This document shows positions 42,521-57,666 of a stretch of DNA of 64,000 bases, piece after piece. The notes under the pieces were generated by a model. It was given only the letters and a program-made list of their open reading frames with translations. It did not search any database and was not told the DNA's origin. Within the stretch, counting starts at the first letter, position 1. The number at the start of each line of letters is the position of its first letter. The stretch lies in the IMG/VR virus record IMGVR_UViG_3300042502_001233, positions 248,001 through 312,000 of that record. The stretch is one strand, 5' to 3'. The position numbers and the translations under genes were made by a program.

Positions 42521-43020
42521 TCACACCGCATAAATCCATAATTGAGTTATTTGTTCGTCAGTAATATTTTCTGGTGTTATATCATATTCACCATATTTTT
42601 TCATATATGTTATATATTCTAATTTCATATCTTTGGATAACGAGTTCCAAAAATTTAATGATTTTTGTCTGTCTTCCATTTCTTCATCATTCATAACTCT
42701 AATTATTTTATGTTCTAATAATTGTGGTGCAATAATACCTTGATTATATAACCAACTCGCTAACTTAAATTGTAGTCTTACTAATAGTGTTTTCATTTCT
42801 TATTTATTATTTATTAAAATTACTCGAAAATAGGTAAAAAAGTTTCGTTATCATAACCAATAATCTTTTTACCGTTTTTTATATTATCGTTTATCCATTT
42901 ATCTTCTTCAGACCACTTTGTTTCAAATTCTGTTTTTAAATTATTCATTCGGTCTTTTAAATCTTGTGGGATATTATCATTATTTAATATCTCATTTCTT
43001 AATTGTTCGTGTTTTTCCAT
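42521..43020 (-). CDS. Cassette 15: two ORFs (42521; 42820, paralog of 34827/36828)
   Basis: ORF track; TATATTTG box near 43035. Confidence 0.7.
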
Positions 43021-43085
43021 AATTCTATTTTTTACAAATATACTAATTTATTTCTAATTTATCAACCCTCCCACAAAAATACTGT

Positions 43086-43179
43086 GTATAACAAGGTGTA
43101 TAAGAAAGTTTGCTATCAGCATTTGTGGTAATTTTAAAGTTCATCTAAGCAAACCTTCTTATACACCCAACCGTTATAG
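43086..43179 (+). repeat. attC-like site 15 (family A)
   Basis: TAAC 43089, GTT 43173. Confidence 0.9.
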
Positions 43180-43208
43180 GAAATTTTATTTTTTTTCTCA
43201 CCGCACCG

Positions 43209-43511
43209 TTAGCATCTTGGAACACCTTCTGCTGGGTCATACCATCCGTGAATATTAAATTCGTGCTTTGGCGAAGGTTTTTTACCCCATTTAGCAACTG
43301 CTTCTTCTTCTGTTTTTGGAAACGGAAATTGATTATGAATAACATTTAGTTCTTGTTGGTGCTTTTCATCACCCATACTTGGGTCAATTTCGTGTTTAAA
43401 AACTAAATTAAGATGCTTCTTAATCATTGTCGTTTGTTCTTTGGTTATTGTTTCAGCGTTGCTTACTTCAAAAAAACCTTGTAGCCAATAGGCAAAATCT
43501 CTACTTGTCAT
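43209..43511 (-). CDS. Cassette 16 gene (MTSRDFAYWLQGFFE, a phage-type motif)
   Basis: F.YWLQG..E...IK.HL.LVF motif. Confidence 0.75.
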   Translation of the reverse strand: MTSRDFAYWLQGFFEVSNAETITKEQTTMIKKHLNLVFKHEIDPSMGDEKHQQELNVIHNQFPFPKTEEEAVAKWGKKPSPKHEFNIHGWYDPAEGVPRC

Positions 43512-43557
43512 ATTTTTAAATTTGTTTATTGCCAACCCACAAAAAAATAAAACTATC

Positions 43558-43653
43558 CTATAACACGGGTTTGACGTAATGCCACCAGATAGTTTAGGCT
43601 AAATTTAAAGTTCGTGCAAGGTGGCACTAACGCCAAGCCCGAAACCGTTATGA
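43558..43653 (+). repeat. attC-like site 16 (last)
   Basis: TAAC 43561, CGGGTTTGACGTAATGCCAC / GTGGCACTAACGCCAAGCCCG, GTT 43647. Confidence 0.85.
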
Positions 43654-44118
43654 AAACCATTCTGGTAATTCTCTACCTTTCCATTTGGCTAATTTCCTTT
43701 TCTCTGTTCTATAATATTCTCTGTAGCTATCCACAGCATCACCAACCTTGCATTCGTCTGGCATAGCCAAAGCAAATGGTGTTATATCACTATTGTATTT
43801 CAATTTAGGTTTATGTATTAAACACCATTCAATTACCGCTTGTGACTTATGTCTTTTTTCGTAACGATATGTGTATTCTTTGCACAATTCAAGTCCCAAA
43901 TCACAAAGCCAAATGTAGTTTTCCATACATTCTCTGGCCCATATTGCACTTGGATGATTTTTATGGGATAACTTGTATGGTATATCATACCCAGATTCTA
44001 CTACGTGATGAACGCCACACAACAATTGTGCATATTCAACTATCATCTTGGTACAATGGCGATTTACATGGTATTTTGCACATTTTTTAACATCTAAATC
44101 TAAAACGAATATGTTCAT
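43648..44118 (-). CDS. Pyrimidine-dimer DNA glycosylase / endonuclease V family protein
   Basis: MNIF.LD...CA.YH...H..KM.VE.AQLL...H.NHP...W...EY..RY...H. Confidence 0.8.
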   Translation of the reverse strand: MNIFVLDLDVKKCAKYHVNRHCTKMIVEYAQLLCGVHHVVESGYDIPYKLSHKNHPSAIWARECMENYIWLCDLGLELCKEYTYRYEKRHKSQAVIEWCLIHKPKLKYNSDITPFALAMPDECKVGDAVDSYREYYRTEKRKLAKWKGRELPEWFS

Positions 44119-44168
44119 AATTTTAATTTTTATTATACAAAGATACTATTTTATTTTAAATTACAAAA

Positions 44169-45137
44169 TTAATATCTATATTTTTTAAAAATATTTTCAG
44201 AATTTTTTGTTAATTTCACAATACCAGATGAAATTAATTCAATTATTTTTTGTTTTGTAACATATGGTGATTCTATTTCAGTTATAATTGAATAATTTTC
44301 ACCAAAAATTTCTTTACCTTTTTGTATTTTTATCGGGTTTACACCGTATTCTAACAGACTAGTTGGTTTTATTTCATAAATGAAATCACCATCAGTGAAA
44401 TCTGGGAAATATGTTTTTATTTTATCTTTATAAAAATATTTAACAGCGTATTTTTTTATTTCACAACTAGTAAATATTTTATCACTATTATTAATTAAAA
44501 AAGATAATTCTAGTGAACTTCTAAAATAAAGATTGTTATACCAACCACTAACATGTTTAACATTATTTGATGTTGTTATGTATTTTTCTCTATCTAAATT
44601 TTCAGTATAGAACTTATTTAGAGATTCACTAATTTTATTTTTAGTCTCGTTATTATGTTTTAAAGTGTTATTTTTCCTTTTTGATTCAATAATATTTTTT
44701 TGCCACTCATTCGTTCTTTCAAGTTTAGAACCAGTTAATTTGTCAATAACTTTATTTTTTATTTCATCTACTTTCATTGGGTTATTAACACCATATTTTT
44801 GTAAATTAGAAATTTCCCAATTTTTTTGTTTAATTTTTTGGTTAGTGTTAGAAACCCTTTTATCAACCATATCTTTAGATTGAGTTTTACCTAACCAATA
44901 ATCTCTTTTAATTGTTTTGTTTTTGTTCCTACATTCAATAGAACAATTTTTTAAATAACCAACACCTACATTTCTGTATGTAGTTTCTTTACCACAAACA
45001 CAACATTCACCGTCACCTTTAATTTTTAAATATTTGTCATAGTATTCTCTACCATTTAGATTGTGTTTAAAATTAACATGTGTTGTTAAAGCTTTTAAGT
45101 TTTTGAATTCTTCATTACAAATTTTACAAGTTTCCAT
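44169..45137 (-). CDS. Homing endonuclease (C2H2 finger, NUMOD3-like repeats, TnsA-like PD-(D/E)XK)
   Basis: FRSSLE...YFPDF...YEIKP. Confidence 0.7.
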   Translation of the reverse strand: METCKICNEEFKNLKALTTHVNFKHNLNGREYYDKYLKIKGDGECCVCGKETTYRNVGVGYLKNCSIECRNKNKTIKRDYWLGKTQSKDMVDKRVSNTNQKIKQKNWEISNLQKYGVNNPMKVDEIKNKVIDKLTGSKLERTNEWQKNIIESKRKNNTLKHNNETKNKISESLNKFYTENLDREKYITTSNNVKHVSGWYNNLYFRSSLELSFLINNSDKIFTSCEIKKYAVKYFYKDKIKTYFPDFTDGDFIYEIKPTSLLEYGVNPIKIQKGKEIFGENYSIITEIESPYVTKQKIIELISSGIVKLTKNSENIFKKYRY

Positions 45138-45172
45138 ATCTTTTTATTTATAAATATACGGAACTTTGAAAA

Positions 45173-45259
45173 AGTTTCAAGTATCATCTTAACAACATGT
45201 TTATCATTGTGATATTGTGCACATTTTTTTGTGTTTGTGTCCAGTACAAATATATTCAT
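45173..45259 (-). pseudogene. Stranded 5' end of the glycosylase gene (MNIFVLDTNTKKCAQYHNDKHVVKMILET)
   Basis: Manual translation aligns to the N-terminus of 43648. Confidence 0.85.
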
Positions 45260-45311
45260 ATTGCAAATATATAAGTTATTTTTTTAACCATCAAAATTTT
45301 TATCTTAAAAA

Positions 45312-46472
45312 TTATTTTTCAGGGGTTTCTTCATTAACAACAGCCCAATATACACAACCAATCGATATAATCAATGTCATAATGTAAACAAACCATAATT
45401 GTCCAGAGGTTGGTTCAAATGACAAATAGTTGAAATCTTTGAACGATTTATAATGCCAATGTGAGTTTATAGCCTTCATATATATATTATAAAATGCTTT
45501 ATCATCTTTGACTGGTGCTTCCATTAAATCTTCTCTGATATCTATCAAAACACGTTTATTATCGCACCATGAAAATGGTTTAACCCATTCAATGTTACCC
45601 AAGTTGTCAAGCCCGATGCAAACAACTATTTCATTCTGATTACCACCATCCCAATAAGCTTCTTGTTGGAATGCTGTGCTGATATCTCTGTTCTTAAAGA
45701 ACAAAGTAAAAATTTTAACCTTATATTTACGACCATATGCTCCGTTGATATAATCTAACGTTTTAATAATTTTAAGTCTTGACCTAGAGTTAAAATCTTC
45801 TATACCTATGACACTAGATTGGTAATTATATTGTTGTAATTCAGGATACTCATACAATCCACTAGTCCTTGCTTTATCTTTTTCAATATTTGGATAGTTA
45901 AAGGCCGAATGGTTACTTTTAAGAATATTTGTGAACGATTTGGTATGTGTTGTGGTTATCGATGTATTGATGTCACGATTCCAGATAATACGGTACATAT
46001 CACCATCCTTACCACAAGAACCACGATAATTTATATCACGATTTAACTCAACAAATTTAGGCGTTTCTTTCCAAAGTTTGACCAAAGATAAATATTTGTC
46101 TCGACTTATTGATATTTCATCACCATCTGAGTCAATCATAACATAACGTTCTGAGTTATAGTCACAATAGGAACAGTCATAATAAACCGTGTGTGTTGTT
46201 CTATTTTTTCCAGAACCAGTACTATATGTGCGGCTACATGTTTTCTTTTTCCATGTTTCCCATGCTTCATAGTATCTAGCTTCTGTTACAATATAACCGT
46301 TGTATTCAACGTCTGAAAGGGTTACTGATTTCATAGTGTAATATGAAATCAATATAAACAATGCGCTACCAGCAACTGGGATAAGAATTTCCCACCAAAC
46401 AATTTTGTTTTTAAATAAAACCCACCCTATCACAGCGGCTAGGATGGGGATTATAAGTGCATACCAAATCAT
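45312..46472 (-). CDS. Membrane protein
   Basis: Two N-terminal and one C-terminal hydrophobic helices. Confidence 0.75.
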   Translation of the reverse strand: MIWYALIIPILAAVIGWVLFKNKIVWWEILIPVAGSALFILISYYTMKSVTLSDVEYNGYIVTEARYYEAWETWKKKTCSRTYSTGSGKNRTTHTVYYDCSYCDYNSERYVMIDSDGDEISISRDKYLSLVKLWKETPKFVELNRDINYRGSCGKDGDMYRIIWNRDINTSITTTHTKSFTNILKSNHSAFNYPNIEKDKARTSGLYEYPELQQYNYQSSVIGIEDFNSRSRLKIIKTLDYINGAYGRKYKVKIFTLFFKNRDISTAFQQEAYWDGGNQNEIVVCIGLDNLGNIEWVKPFSWCDNKRVLIDIREDLMEAPVKDDKAFYNIYMKAINSHWHYKSFKDFNYLSFEPTSGQLWFVYIMTLIISIGCVYWAVVNEETPEK

Positions 46473-47605
46473 TAGAGGTCAAGTTTTATAATGTTAAACA
46501 ATTCATTTTCGTTATTATACACTTTATGAGGGTAATCATTAGGTACATAACTATTATCATAACTAAAATATAGTAGTTTTATTTTTTTCATTTCACATTT
46601 TTTTCGTTTATTTTCATCTCTTTTTACAATTTTCTCAAATTCTTTTTCGCCACCAAAAAATTTAATTGGTTTAAAATGTTGACCACCTTGATATTCAATA
46701 GCTATTTTTAATTTAGGAATGAATATATCAAAATGTTGTTTACCAAGCCACTTTGGTGAAAATTTATTTAAAACTTCTAAAGTTTTAAATTCTTTTTTTA
46801 AGTTTTCAAAAAGTTTATTTTCAGAAACAGTACCAAATAAATTACATTTTGGGCAACCACAGCCTTTTAAATGCGTGTTAGGTATTTGTTCAAAATCACC
46901 ATGAATACTACATGTTATTGTTAATTTAGTTTTTGAACCTTTATATATACTTTTACTGTAATCATACCTATCACCATGTATTAATAAAGCGATTTTTTTA
47001 AACTCTTCTGTGTTAGTAGAAACTCTACCGACACATTTAGGACAACCACTACCGTCTAAATGTATAAAAGGGATTTGATTAAAATCACCGTGAATAGGGC
47101 AGTTAATTATGACTGAACTTTTATTGTTTATATAATTAACTTTATCATAATTGTAAAAAAAGTTATGTTTTTTACTAGCTTTTTCTATAAACCTATTATT
47201 TATAATTTTAGTTTCCCTTATTTTTCCAATTTTACATATTGGACACCCTTGACCTTTTAAGTGCATAGCTGGTGTTTGTTCAAACATACCATGGTTATCA
47301 CATATTATTTTAACTTTTGTTTTTGTGTTTACATAATCAACCATCGAATAATCATATTTATCCCCATGTGCTTCATTAAAAGATTTCAAAACGCTATCAA
47401 TATCTTTTTTTTCTTTACCAGCACATTTAGGACAACCACGACCACTTAAATGACTATGAGGCAATTGATAAAATTCACCGTGTATACTACAAATTATAGG
47501 TATTTTAGTTTTTGAGTCGTAATCACTTATGTTTTCATAATTATATTTATCACCATGAACCAATTTACTCTTTTCGATGAACTTTTCTTTTGTTAATTTT
47601 TCCAT
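46472..47605 (-). CDS. Endonuclease with four CxxHG repeats and Vsr/PD-(D/E)XK C-terminus
   Basis: FDIFIPKLKIAIEYQGGQHF. Confidence 0.75.
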   Translation of the reverse strand: MEKLTKEKFIEKSKLVHGDKYNYENISDYDSKTKIPIICSIHGEFYQLPHSHLSGRGCPKCAGKEKKDIDSVLKSFNEAHGDKYDYSMVDYVNTKTKVKIICDNHGMFEQTPAMHLKGQGCPICKIGKIRETKIINNRFIEKASKKHNFFYNYDKVNYINNKSSVIINCPIHGDFNQIPFIHLDGSGCPKCVGRVSTNTEEFKKIALLIHGDRYDYSKSIYKGSKTKLTITCSIHGDFEQIPNTHLKGCGCPKCNLFGTVSENKLFENLKKEFKTLEVLNKFSPKWLGKQHFDIFIPKLKIAIEYQGGQHFKPIKFFGGEKEFEKIVKRDENKRKKCEMKKIKLLYFSYDNSYVPNDYPHKVYNNENELFNIIKLDL

Positions 47606-57535: not shown

Positions 57536-57592
57536 TTTACTTCTTTCTAAATAAATATCTAGAAATTATAAAAAGTACAAAAAAGTTTAAGG

Positions 57593-57666
57593 TGGAAGTA
57601 ACGGGACTCGAACCCGTGTTCTCGCAACATCAGCCGCTTTATACTATCCTATTGTACTATACTCCC
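57593..57666 (-). tRNA. tRNA-like RNA with G3:U70 and A73, irregular anticodon loop (CTGATG)
   Basis: GGGAGTA/TACTTCC-A, D arm GTAC/GTAT, T arm ACGGG-TTCGAGT-CCCGT. Confidence 0.7.

What the first reader, a model, noticed from the sequence alone, without database searches (positions are those of the whole stretch)
43648..45270. Endonuclease inserted in the glycosylase gene, leaving the old 29-codon 5' end and a rebuilt, diverged one
Seen: upstream of the 44169 endonuclease lie a promoter and MNIFVLDTNTKKCAQYHNDKHVVKMILET (45173-45259). Downstream, the intact gene restarts with its own promoter as MNIFVLDLDVKKCAKYHVNRHCTKMIVEY. Inference: intron-less homing in which the element carries a replacement, cleavage-resistant 5' end.
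Basis: partly seen in the sequence, partly recalled or inferred. Interest (0 to 1): 0.65.

Follow-up and report, generated by a model that had tools for sequence, protein, structure and literature searches.

The report
Homing endonuclease cassette replacing gene start
A selfish nuclease gene has inserted itself inside a DNA-repair-like gene of a giant lake phage and keeps that gene working by bringing its own promoter and a divergent copy of the first 29 codons, leaving the original 29 codons stranded upstream.

Summary
On the minus strand lie: a stranded 29-codon gene start (45173-45259), a 322-aa nuclease gene (44169-45137), and an intact 156-aa endonuclease-V-like gene (43648-44118) whose first 29 codons are only 64% identical in DNA to the stranded copy.

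Two filled/empty allele pairs in near-identical phage backgrounds show one clean insertion of about 1.15 kb exactly between codons 29 and 30. The stranded copy is 98-99% identical to the start of the uninterrupted allele.

The same cassette (nuclease 95% aa, replacement start 97% nt) sits in gene bodies that are only 65% identical, so the replacement start travels with the nuclease. Of 80 loci carrying the gene, only the 3 with the full nuclease have a second gene start.

In other lineages the stranded copy is decaying, by a stop codon or by deletions. The nuclease has zinc fingers, a NUMOD3 motif and a TnsA/Vsr-like PD-(D/E)XK domain.

Cleavage of the uninterrupted allele and resistance of the replacement start are inferred, not tested.

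The closest known parallel is the mirror-image case in fungal mitochondria: mobile endonuclease ORFs that carry a foreign 3' gene end. I found no phage or 5'-end description. It is a new variant of a known kind.

The parts
45264..45271 (-). TATATTTG box (Bacteroidota-type -7 element) of the resident gene's promoter, 4 nt before the fragment's ATG. It probably now drives transcription into the nuclease gene.
   Evidence: The motif is enriched and positioned upstream of ORFs. Uninterrupted alleles L008, L011, L013, L015 and L017 have the same 4-5 nt spacing.
45173..45259 (-). Stranded original 5' end of the endonuclease-V-like gene (29 codons, ending ...KMILET).
   Evidence: It is 83% nt identical to the start of the syntenic nuclease-free relative L004, against 61% for the replacement copy. 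An RNA-library contig of an uninterrupted allele matches it at 88/89 nt.
45095..45259 (-). 54-aa ORF: the fragment reading out of frame across the left junction and over the nuclease start codon. Probably a by-product.
   Evidence: The same 54-aa ORF occurs in L005 and L096. The fragment carries a stop or deletions in L105, L087-90, L099 and L103.
44032..45172 (-). The mobile cassette (about 1.14 kb): short leader, nuclease gene, promoter, and 29 replacement codons.
   Evidence: Identity to L095/L093 (the same cassette in a different gene) is 87-100% in each 30-nt bin, mostly 100%, between about 45172 and 44032, and falls outside. L010 carries 1150 bp exactly here relative to the empty site L015.
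44169..45137 (-). Homing-endonuclease-like gene, 322 aa. It has a C2H2 zinc finger (aa 4-25), a second Cys4 motif (C45, C48, C65, C69), a NUMOD3-like motif (about aa 160-172, seen in relatives) and a C-terminal PD-(D/E)XK domain (aa about 170-308; E210, D246, E255, K257).
   Evidence: phrog_3339 'homing endonuclease' at 3.3e-8. Pfam zinc-finger, NUMOD3 and DUF7487 hits. Invariant columns in 32 homologues. AF2 model pLDDT 86.8. TnsA at Z 8.8, Vsr at Z 5.0, I-Bth0305I at Z 4.0.
44138..44145 (-). TATCTTTG box carried by the cassette, 19 nt before the intact gene's ATG.
   Evidence: The same 19-26 nt geometry occurs in cassette-bearing L003, L093, L005, L007, L010 and L096.
44032..44118 (-). Replacement 5' end (29 codons, ...TKMIVEY) belonging to the cassette.
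   Evidence: 100% identical to L003 and 97% to L093, although the gene bodies are 86% and 65% identical. It has 19/45 mismatches to an empty target site over codons 18-32.
43648..44031 (-). Resident gene body (codons 30-156 and stop) of the endonuclease-V-like gene.
   Evidence: The whole protein model (pLDDT 94.6) matches T4 endonuclease V at Z 9.0 over 119/137 residues.

Best explanation
This is a free-standing homing endonuclease gene that lives inside a protein-coding gene without an intron or intein. The mobile unit is a cassette of about 1.14 kb (window 45172-44032, minus strand). It holds the 322-aa nuclease gene, a promoter, and a divergent copy of codons 1-29 of the target gene.

The cassette sits exactly between codons 29 and 30 of an endonuclease-V-like gene. 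The replacement codons join in frame to the resident codons 30-156, so the gene stays whole. The resident codons 1-29, with their promoter, are left upstream as a dead stub.

Inferred mechanism:
1. In a mixed infection the nuclease cuts uninterrupted alleles near codons 25-30. This stretch encodes the invariant K24-M25 and E28 and is very conserved in DNA.
2. The break is repaired from the cassette-bearing genome. The stub and upstream DNA serve as the left homology arm and the gene body as the right arm, so the whole cassette is copied in.
3. The replacement start re-creates a full-length gene. It must therefore differ from the target site, or the element would cut itself. In every cassette-bearing locus it does differ, at 14-20 of the 45 nt of codons 18-32.
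4. Its divergence from the stub (56-67% nt in five of six loci) should also limit deletion of the cassette by recombination between the direct repeats.

The replacement start most likely derives from a naturally divergent allele rather than from recoding in place. The resident promoter now probably transcribes the nuclease.

Shown: the insertion, its exact site, its mobility, linkage of the replacement start to the nuclease, and decay of the stub. Inferred: cleavage, the position of the cut, resistance, and promoter use.
For: Structure.

Filled/empty pairs:
- L010 against L015. Flanks are 93-97% identical, the gene body 99%, and the stub 98% identical to the empty allele's start. 1150 bp are inserted after ...CTTGAAAC at codon 29.
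- L096 against L004. The stub is 99% and the body 98% identical, and flanks are nearly identical.

Same cassette, different host gene:
- Window against L093/L095. The nuclease is 95% aa identical and the replacement start 97% nt, but the gene body only 65% nt, with sharp boundaries at about 45172 and 44032.
- Window against L003. 232/233 nt are identical across the nuclease 3' remnant, the promoter and the 87 nt, then 85-87% from codon 33 onward.

Association: 3/3 loci with the full nuclease have two gene starts, against 0/76 loci without any trace of it. Every sampled nuclease homologue is preceded by a 5' fragment of this gene; these homologues are 46-95% identical and come from 13 distinct loci.

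Co-divergence: nuclease identity correlates with replacement-start identity (Mantel r 0.68, p 1e-4) more than with body identity (r 0.24, p 0.07).

Target-site differences.

Stub decay: a stop codon in L105, internal deletions in L087-90, L099 and L103, and complete loss in L003.

Nuclease fold and catalytic motif.

Population: in the same lake metagenomes, uninterrupted alleles co-occur whose 5' ends align to the stub and read straight on into ...AQL.CG.H.

No intron model matches.
Against: - No biochemical or genetic evidence exists for cleavage, for its position, or for resistance of the replacement start.
- The left junction is identical in all lineages, which fits one ancient insertion followed by homing but does not locate the cut.
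- In L084/L085/L102 the stub is of the replacement type (93% identical to the downstream copy), so strong divergence between the two repeats is not obligatory.
- In the L087-90, L099 and L105 cassettes no TAnnTTTG box precedes the intact gene, so 'own promoter' is not universal.
- Three nuclease-free alleles also have variant target cores. L009 and L012 have 18 and 15 of 45 mismatches over codons 18-32; L014 has only 9 of 45 but 7 of 21 in codons 25-31. A variant core alone is therefore not diagnostic.
- In L098 and L103 an intact nuclease and stub are not followed by an intact gene within 2.5-3 kb.
- Phylogenetic non-independence inflates the simple counts.
Confidence: 0.82

Rival explanations
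1. The upstream 29-codon piece, or the 54-aa ORF it opens, is a functional product, such as a small regulatory peptide or a translated leader needed to express the nuclease. On this view it is not a dead remnant.
For: The 29 codons are intact in five sampled lineages: the window, L005, L007, L010 and L096. The 54-aa ORF that overlaps the nuclease start recurs in at least the window, L005 and L096. In L104 the first four codons are fused in frame to the nuclease. The resident promoter box is retained.
Against: - The stub has a stop at codon 27 in L105.
- It is reduced to a few codons in L087-90, L099 and L103, and is absent in L003, while the nuclease or the downstream gene stays intact.
- The tail of the 54-aa ORF is simply the nuclease N-terminus read in another frame.
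- Intact stubs match empty alleles at 98-99%, as expected for recent insertions that have had no time to decay.
Confidence: 0.1
2. The nuclease is no longer mobile, or never was: it is a domesticated DNA-binding or defence nuclease. On this view the two gene starts come from an old local duplication that is inherited vertically.
For: - Cleavage has not been demonstrated.
- The nuclease is single-copy in the genome.
- Intact nuclease ORFs persist in L098 and L103 without an intact target gene nearby.
Against: - Presence/absence polymorphism occurs at the identical nucleotide position in backgrounds 93-99% identical.
- A 95-97% identical cassette sits in gene bodies that are 65% identical.
- Near-perfect identity of the cassette's right end ends abruptly between the window and L003.

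These mosaics require recent horizontal movement of exactly this unit.
Confidence: 0.05
3. The nuclease gene sits in a self-splicing intron or intein, so that the upstream 29 codons are exon 1 of the real gene.
For: The insertion lies inside a coding sequence at a conserved site, as introns and inteins do.
Against: - No Rfam family matches in 43000-46000, even at E 1.
- The nuclease is a separate ORF in another frame.
- The downstream gene is complete with its own ATG and full-length homology.
- The putative exon 1 decays in relatives.
Confidence: 0.01
4. The arrangement is an assembly chimera of two co-occurring phage strains.
For: Related nuclease-free strains are present in the same lake samples.
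Against: - Contigs with zero differences from several independent runs and studies bridge both junctions. X3 records 13 and 17 and X4 records 21 and 24 do so with 34 nt or more on each side of the junction. X2 record 2 bridges the right junction.
- The same architecture was assembled independently in at least 10 other metagenomes.
Confidence: 0.01

Closest known systems
Mobile endonuclease ORFs (mORFs) of fungal mitochondria that carry a foreign gene end: Allomyces macrogynus atp6; Glomus sp. atp6, atp9, cox2 and nad3; Rhizopus atp9; Mortierella cox2 (PMC3630166 and the work cited there).
   Same: - An endonuclease ORF is inserted inside a protein gene without an intron.
- The element carries a divergent copy of the displaced gene end, which fuses in frame to the rest of the gene.
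- The native end is left beside it as a non-functional duplicate.
- That native end is much closer to relatives (91-98% there, 98-99% here) than the imported copy is (64-81% there, 55-67% here).
   Different: - This case is the mirror image: the 5' end is replaced rather than the 3' end, so most cassette types must also bring a promoter and start codon.
- The nuclease is a zinc-finger / PD-(D/E)XK protein, not LAGLIDADG or GIY-YIG.
- The host is a giant lake phage, not a mitochondrion.
Intronless homing by free-standing endonucleases of T4-like phages: SegB, SegF, SegG, MobE (PMC2988022, PMC2330249, PMC2790892).
   Same: A free-standing nuclease gene spreads by double-strand-break repair with co-conversion of flanking markers. 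The carrier genome's own target sequence is polymorphic and is presumed immune.
   Different: Those genes lie between genes. No part of the target gene is duplicated, and none carries a replacement gene end.
Endonuclease insertions that split phage genes: mobE in nrdA of Aeromonas phage Aeh1, mobA in T4 genes 39/60, and a seg-like gene in gene 43 of phage 25 (PMC2988022).
   Same: A free-standing endonuclease gene is inserted at a functionally critical, conserved part of a coding sequence, without an intron.
   Different: There the gene is left in two pieces whose products reassemble. Here nothing is split functionally, because a complete gene is regenerated and the stub is discarded.
Engineered 'recoded rescue' homing gene drives (from my own knowledge; only the review PMC8996256 came up in the search and I did not read it in detail).
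   Same: The design logic matches: a nuclease cassette homes into a gene and carries a recoded, uncuttable copy of the disrupted part, so that carriers keep gene function.
   Different: Those are synthetic, RNA-guided and used in insects. This is a natural protein-guided element in phages, and its resistance is untested.
TnsA of Tn7, Vsr, and the I-Bth0305I catalytic domain (restriction-endonuclease-like fold).
   Same: The predicted C-terminal domain (aa about 170-308) superposes on TnsA at Z 8.8 (133 residues, rmsd 3.6), on Vsr at Z 5.0 and on I-Bth0305I at Z 4.0. It also has an E...PD...ExK motif.
   Different: Sequence identity is only 11-12%. The N-terminal C2H2 and Cys4 zinc modules and the NUMOD3-like motif are not part of those proteins. 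No transposition partners are present.

Membership tests
Free-standing homing endonuclease gene (intronless homing) | Encodes a nuclease domain with intact catalytic residues plus DNA-binding modules. | tested here: met
   PD-(D/E)XK fold, with TnsA at Z 8.8. E210, D246, E255 and K257 are invariant in 32 homologues. C2H2 and Cys4 zinc motifs are invariant, and NUMOD3 is found in relatives.
Free-standing homing endonuclease gene (intronless homing) | Presence/absence polymorphism at one precise site in otherwise near-identical genomes. | tested here: met
   L010 against L015 and L096 against L004. The insertion lies exactly between codons 29 and 30, with flanks 93-99% identical.
Free-standing homing endonuclease gene (intronless homing) | Horizontal spread with co-conversion of adjacent sequence (mosaic boundaries). 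| tested here: met
   The window against L093/L095 and against L003. The right-hand tract ends at codon 30 in L010 and at codon 34 in L096. Mantel test.
Free-standing homing endonuclease gene (intronless homing) | The enzyme cleaves the element-free allele, and the element-bearing allele is immune. | not testable with these tools
   Only indirect evidence exists: replacement starts differ from an empty site at 14-20 of 45 nt over codons 18-32.
Free-standing homing endonuclease gene (intronless homing) | Not embedded in a self-splicing intron or intein. | tested here: met
   There is no Rfam match. The nuclease is a separate ORF, out of frame with the stub, and the downstream gene is complete.
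Fungal mitochondrial mORF with duplicated gene end | The element carries a divergent copy of the displaced gene end, fused in frame. The native end is retained as a closer-to-relatives duplicate. | tested here: met
   but for the 5' end rather than the 3' end.
Fungal mitochondrial mORF with duplicated gene end | A LAGLIDADG or GIY-YIG endonuclease in a mitochondrial genome, replacing the 3' end. | tested here: not met
   This is a PD-(D/E)XK-type nuclease in a 362-kb virus record, and it replaces the 5' end together with a promoter.
Pyrimidine-dimer DNA glycosylase / T4 endonuclease V (Pfam PF03013), for the target gene | Sequence match to the family model above its threshold. | tested here: not met
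   The window's intact gene has no Pfam hit. The stub ORF scores 17.2 bits against a cut-off of 23. 20 of 27 relatives hit at E<=1, the best at 5.8e-8. A profile against the T4 DenV sequence is not significant, and there is no PDB sequence hit.
Pyrimidine-dimer DNA glycosylase / T4 endonuclease V (Pfam PF03013), for the target gene | Endonuclease V fold. | tested here: met
   The model has pLDDT 94.6. 2END matches at Z 9.0 with 119 of 137 residues aligned, and the next unrelated chain scores Z 4.9. The Foldseek top three hits are all T4 endonuclease V, but weak (E 0.86).
Pyrimidine-dimer DNA glycosylase / T4 endonuclease V (Pfam PF03013), for the target gene | Catalytic N-terminal amine and active-site glutamate (Glu23 in T4). 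| tested here: inconclusive
   N2 and E28 are invariant in 27 relatives, and both lie in the 29 codons. I obtained no residue-level equivalence to T4.
Group I intron | A conserved ribozyme core flanking the endonuclease ORF. | tested here: not met
   No Rfam match at E<=1 in 43000-46000.

The most novel reading that the evidence does not exclude
This may be a natural 'home-and-rescue' gene drive in phages. A homing endonuclease lineage would have solved the problem of living inside a coding sequence by neither RNA splicing nor protein splicing. Instead it carries a promoter and an uncuttable replacement of the gene's first 29 codons.

On this reading the stranded original start is co-opted in two ways: as the left homology arm for homing, and as the promoter or start signal for the nuclease. 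The family is widespread in lake phages, with at least 137 clusters at 90% identity. It shows every stage of the invasion, fixation, decay and loss cycle at one site.
Probability: 0.55. Interest if true: 0.75.

Novelty: new variant of a known kind. Interest (0 to 1): 0.62.

Why it matters
Homing endonucleases are thought to survive inside genes only when hidden in introns or inteins, or else by sitting between genes or splitting tolerant genes. This locus shows a third solution in a virus: the element carries the piece of the gene it displaces, already immune to itself, together with expression signals.

This explains a class of puzzling short 'gene-start' pseudogenes next to nuclease genes in phage genomes. 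It gives a natural counterpart to engineered recoded-rescue gene drives.

It also offers a tractable system for measuring how such elements spread and decay. The target is about 45 bp, the empty, filled and decayed alleles are all known, and uninterrupted and cassette-bearing alleles co-occur in the same lake samples. Finally, it introduces an uncharacterised nuclease architecture: C2H2 finger, Cys4 motif, NUMOD3, and a TnsA-like PD-(D/E)XK domain.

Tried and rejected
- Nucleotide search of the phage GenBank collection found no close relative of the region, only 79-88 nt matches to the stub's conserved sequence. Close relatives came from IMG/VR and metagenome contigs instead.
- The sigma-70 promoter scan was not above shuffles, and no intrinsic terminator was found in 43300-45500. 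I therefore rely on the TAnnTTTG motif analysis.
- A sequence profile of the target family against PDB gave only a spurious hit at E 0.6. hhalign against T4 DenV was not significant. The endonuclease V assignment rests on the fold and on Pfam hits in relatives.
- Rfam gave nothing, so I rejected the intron reading.
- Paralogues of the nuclease in the same genome: none.
- I could not check whether the L098, L103 and L104 records carry an intact target gene further away, because those records are not held.
- Literature searches for a phage case of a homing endonuclease with a duplicated gene start found none. Absence from this library is not proof of novelty.
- Not used, because the family scans, word search and loci settled the question: the big representative protein search, complex prediction and the atlas searches.
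Full report
**What is there**

The window is bases 248001-312000 of a 362,018-bp virus record judged complete. It has 31% G+C, and almost all genes lie on the minus strand. Reading the minus strand downstream from 45312, the order is:

- The stop of a 386-aa gene.
- About 50 nt of spacer containing a TATATTTG box (45264-45271).
- An ATG at 45259 that opens 29 codons of an endonuclease-V-like gene (to 45173).
- A 35-nt leader, then a 322-aa ORF (45137-44169).
- A 50-nt spacer with a TATCTTTG box (44145-44138).
- A complete 156-aa gene (44118-43648).

The fragment ORF hits the same PHROG family (phrog_624) as the full gene, at E 8.8e-14 against 1.4e-57. It is the only other match to the gene in the whole record. 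The two 29-codon stretches share 18/29 residues and 64% of nucleotides.

**Is it an artefact?**

No. The stretch is found in lake-water metagenomes from several independent studies. Contigs with zero differences bridge both junctions, for example 43500-44445 and 44786-45207 in run X3 and 43500-44462 and 44584-45206 in run X4.

**Relatives with and without the nuclease gene**

Searching IMG/VR with the 156-aa protein gave 80 loci. Only three, L005, L007 and L010, contain a full homologue of the 322-aa ORF. These same three are the only loci with a second copy of the gene start. The 76 loci without any trace of the nuclease have one start.

Two pairs are effectively filled and empty alleles of the same phage:

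- **L010 (filled) against L015 (empty).** Flanks are 93-97% identical and the gene body 99%. L010's upstream stub is 98% identical to the start of L015's uninterrupted gene. L010 has 1150 extra bases beginning right after ...CTTGAAAC in codon 29 and ending at codon 30.
- **L096/L097 (filled) against L004/L006 (empty).** These share the window's upstream neighbours. The stub is 99% and the body 98% identical. The divergent tract ends at codon 34.

The left junction is the same in every lineage that keeps an intact original-type stub: the window, L005, L007, L010 and L096.

**The replacement start belongs to the mobile unit**

A homologue 95% identical to the window's nuclease (L093-L095) is followed by a replacement start that is 97% identical to the window's. 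The gene body behind it is only 65% identical, and the stub in front is a different allele. In 30-nt bins, identity is 87-100% (mostly 100%) between about 45172 and 44032, and lower outside that range.

The closest relative, L003, has lost the stub and all but the last 31 codons of the nuclease. Even so, the nuclease remnant, promoter and 87-nt start are identical to the window at 232 of 233 positions. Identity then drops to 85-87% from codon 33 on.

Across ten cassette-bearing loci, nuclease identity tracks replacement-start identity (Mantel r 0.68, p 1e-4). It tracks gene-body identity far less (r 0.24, p 0.07).

Conversely, the window's stub resembles the start of its syntenic nuclease-free relative L004 (83% nt, 26/29 aa). 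That is in line with the neighbouring genes and the gene body (76-86%). The replacement start is an outlier at 61%.

**A family tied to one site**

The nuclease family is large in metagenomes: 137 clusters at E<=0.001, nearly all 320-326 aa and all unnamed. I looked at 13 distinct loci whose nucleases are 46-95% identical to the window's. In every one the nuclease is directly preceded by a 5' piece of this same gene. The piece occurs in different states:

| State of the 5' piece | Loci |
|---|---|
| Intact 29 codons | window, L005, L007, L010, L096 |
| Homogenised to the replacement type | L084/L085/L102 |
| In-frame stop at codon 27 | L105 |
| Internal deletions | L087-90, L099, L103 |
| Four codons fused in frame to the nuclease | L104 |

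In ten loci an intact gene with a variant start follows. In L098 and L103 none follows within 2.5-3 kb. The L104 contig ends too soon to tell.

The replacement starts fall into at least three sequence types around codons 23-31...TKM[IC]VEYAQ...VKMVLEVSQ and ...KQLLE[SAT]AQ. All differ from the target type ...VKMILETAQ.

Over codons 18-32 the replacement starts differ from an empty site at 14-20 of 45 nt. Most nuclease-free alleles differ at 0-11. The exceptions are L009, L012 and L014 (see below). This mix of intact, decaying and lost elements at one site is the expected life cycle of a homing element.

**The proteins**

*The 322-aa protein.* It has an invariant C2H2 finger (C4, C7, H20, H25) and a second invariant Cys4 set (C45, C48, C65, C69). 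Relatives show a NUMOD3 match around residues 160-172. It also has invariant E210, P245-D246, E255 and K257.

Its AlphaFold model has mean pLDDT 86.8. It places residues about 170-308 in a restriction-endonuclease-like fold. The closest structures are TnsA (Z 8.8, 133 residues, rmsd 3.6), Vsr (Z 5.0) and the I-Bth0305I catalytic domain (Z 4.0). PHROGs calls the nearest family 'homing endonuclease'.

*The target gene.* Calling it a 'glycosylase' is reasonable but remote:

- The window's intact copy has no Pfam hit. The stub ORF scores below threshold on Pyr_excise. 20 of 27 relatives hit that family, the best at E 5.8e-8.
- A profile comparison with T4 DenV is not significant.
- The confident model (pLDDT 94.6) superposes on T4 endonuclease V at Z 9.0 over 119 of 137 residues, far above the next chain.

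The 29 codons contain the family's invariant N2, F4, L6, A14, H17, H21, K24, M25 and E28. The element therefore targets the most constrained part of the gene. Consistent with that, many contigs from related lake phages pile up on the stub sequence.

**Promoters**

The sigma-70 consensus scan is uninformative. TAnnTTTG, the -7 element of Bacteroidota promoters (from established knowledge), occurs 87 times on the coding strand against 38 expected. 35% of occurrences end 10-40 nt before an ORF start, against 5.5% for random positions.

Native uninterrupted alleles carry the box 4-5 nt before the ATG. Most cassettes carry their own box 19-26 nt before the replacement ATG. The L087-90, L099 and L105 cassettes have none, and there the gene is presumably co-transcribed with the nuclease. 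A conserved near-match, TATATTTA, also precedes the nuclease ATG.

**Mechanism (inferred)**

1. The nuclease cuts uninterrupted alleles near codons 25-30.
2. Repair uses the stub plus upstream DNA as the left homology arm and the body from codon 30 as the right arm. This copies the cassette.
3. The cassette regenerates a full-length gene, and with it a full-length site. It can persist only if that site is uncuttable, which explains why every replacement start differs there.
4. Its divergence from the stub also lowers the chance that the direct repeats recombine and delete the element.

Distant nuclease-free relatives naturally have V18, C22 or Y29. L009 naturally has the ...VKMVLEVSQ core. The replacement start was therefore probably imported from a divergent allele rather than recoded in place.

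Uninterrupted alleles with stub-like starts co-occur with the cassette in the same lake samples. One contig from an RNA library is 88/89 identical to the window's stub and reads straight on into the gene.

**Comparison with what is known**

The nearest described parallel is in fungal mitochondria. There, mobile endonuclease ORFs carry a foreign 3' end of atp6, atp9, cox2 or nad3 and leave the native 3' end as a duplicate (PMC3630166). The present case is the mirror image, and it needs a promoter.

Reviews of T4-type phages describe intergenic endonuclease genes and endonuclease-split genes, but no duplicated gene end (PMC2988022). My other searches found no phage example.

**Verdict**

Cleavage and resistance remain untested. 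I rate it a new variant of a known kind, of moderate to high interest.

Noticed in passing
window 46472-47605 (-): A second nuclease-like ORF of 377 aa. It has repeated treble-clef zinc-finger modules (DUF4379, DUF723, CapR) and hits phrog_559 and phrog_681, annotated as endonucleases. It sits between the 188-aa and 386-aa genes, which are directly adjacent in relatives L003, L004/L006 and L096. It looks like an ordinary intergenic free-standing homing endonuclease insertion.
   Followed up: partly
L003:4279-6000: In the closest relative the stub and the first 291 codons of the nuclease are gone. Three unrelated ORFs (109, 114 and 265 aa) lie there instead. The last 31 nuclease codons, the promoter and the replacement start remain, practically identical to the window. 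This is a decayed cassette.
   Followed up: yes
L005:4016-6000: About 1.9 kb with six small ORFs is inserted between the nuclease and the replacement start. Similar copies of the cassette's promoter region stand on both sides of this block.
   Followed up: no
L098:2893-3969 and L103:2427-3478: An intact nuclease ORF is preceded by a shortened stub, but no intact target gene follows within 2.5-3 kb downstream. The gene may be lost or lie further away. The records could not be searched.
   Followed up: partly
L104:2501-3493: The first four codons of the target gene (MNIF) are fused in frame to the nuclease (330 aa), directly behind a TAnnTTTG box. Here the nuclease appears to have taken over the resident start codon and promoter.
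   Followed up: no
L009:5940-6100: This nuclease-free allele has a variant target core (18/45 mismatches) and cassette-like promoter spacing (box 21 nt before the ATG, instead of 4-5). It may be a former cassette carrier that lost the nuclease, or the kind of allele the cassette's start came from.
   Followed up: partly
window, whole; e.g. 45264-45271, 44138-44145, 43035-43042: TAnnTTTG boxes are enriched upstream of ORFs, which suggests a Bacteroidota host. In native alleles of the target gene the box ends 4-5 nt before the ATG, which would give a leaderless or near-leaderless mRNA.
   Followed up: partly
window 43553-43642 (-): An unusually G+C-rich spacer lies just after the target gene's stop. 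It can form a 20-bp stem around a 33-nt loop (-31.5 kcal/mol, z -1.8), and a T-rich run follows shortly after a second, smaller hairpin. There is no Rfam or tRNA match.
   Followed up: partly
window 57591-57666 (-): ARAGORN reports a tRNA-like gene with an undetermined anticodon.
   Followed up: no
window 43648-44118 vs 45095-45259: The stranded stub still scores on Pfam Pyr_excise (17.2 bits), whereas the intact gene with the replacement start gets no Pfam hit at all. The imported start lowers the gene's resemblance to the family model.
   Followed up: no
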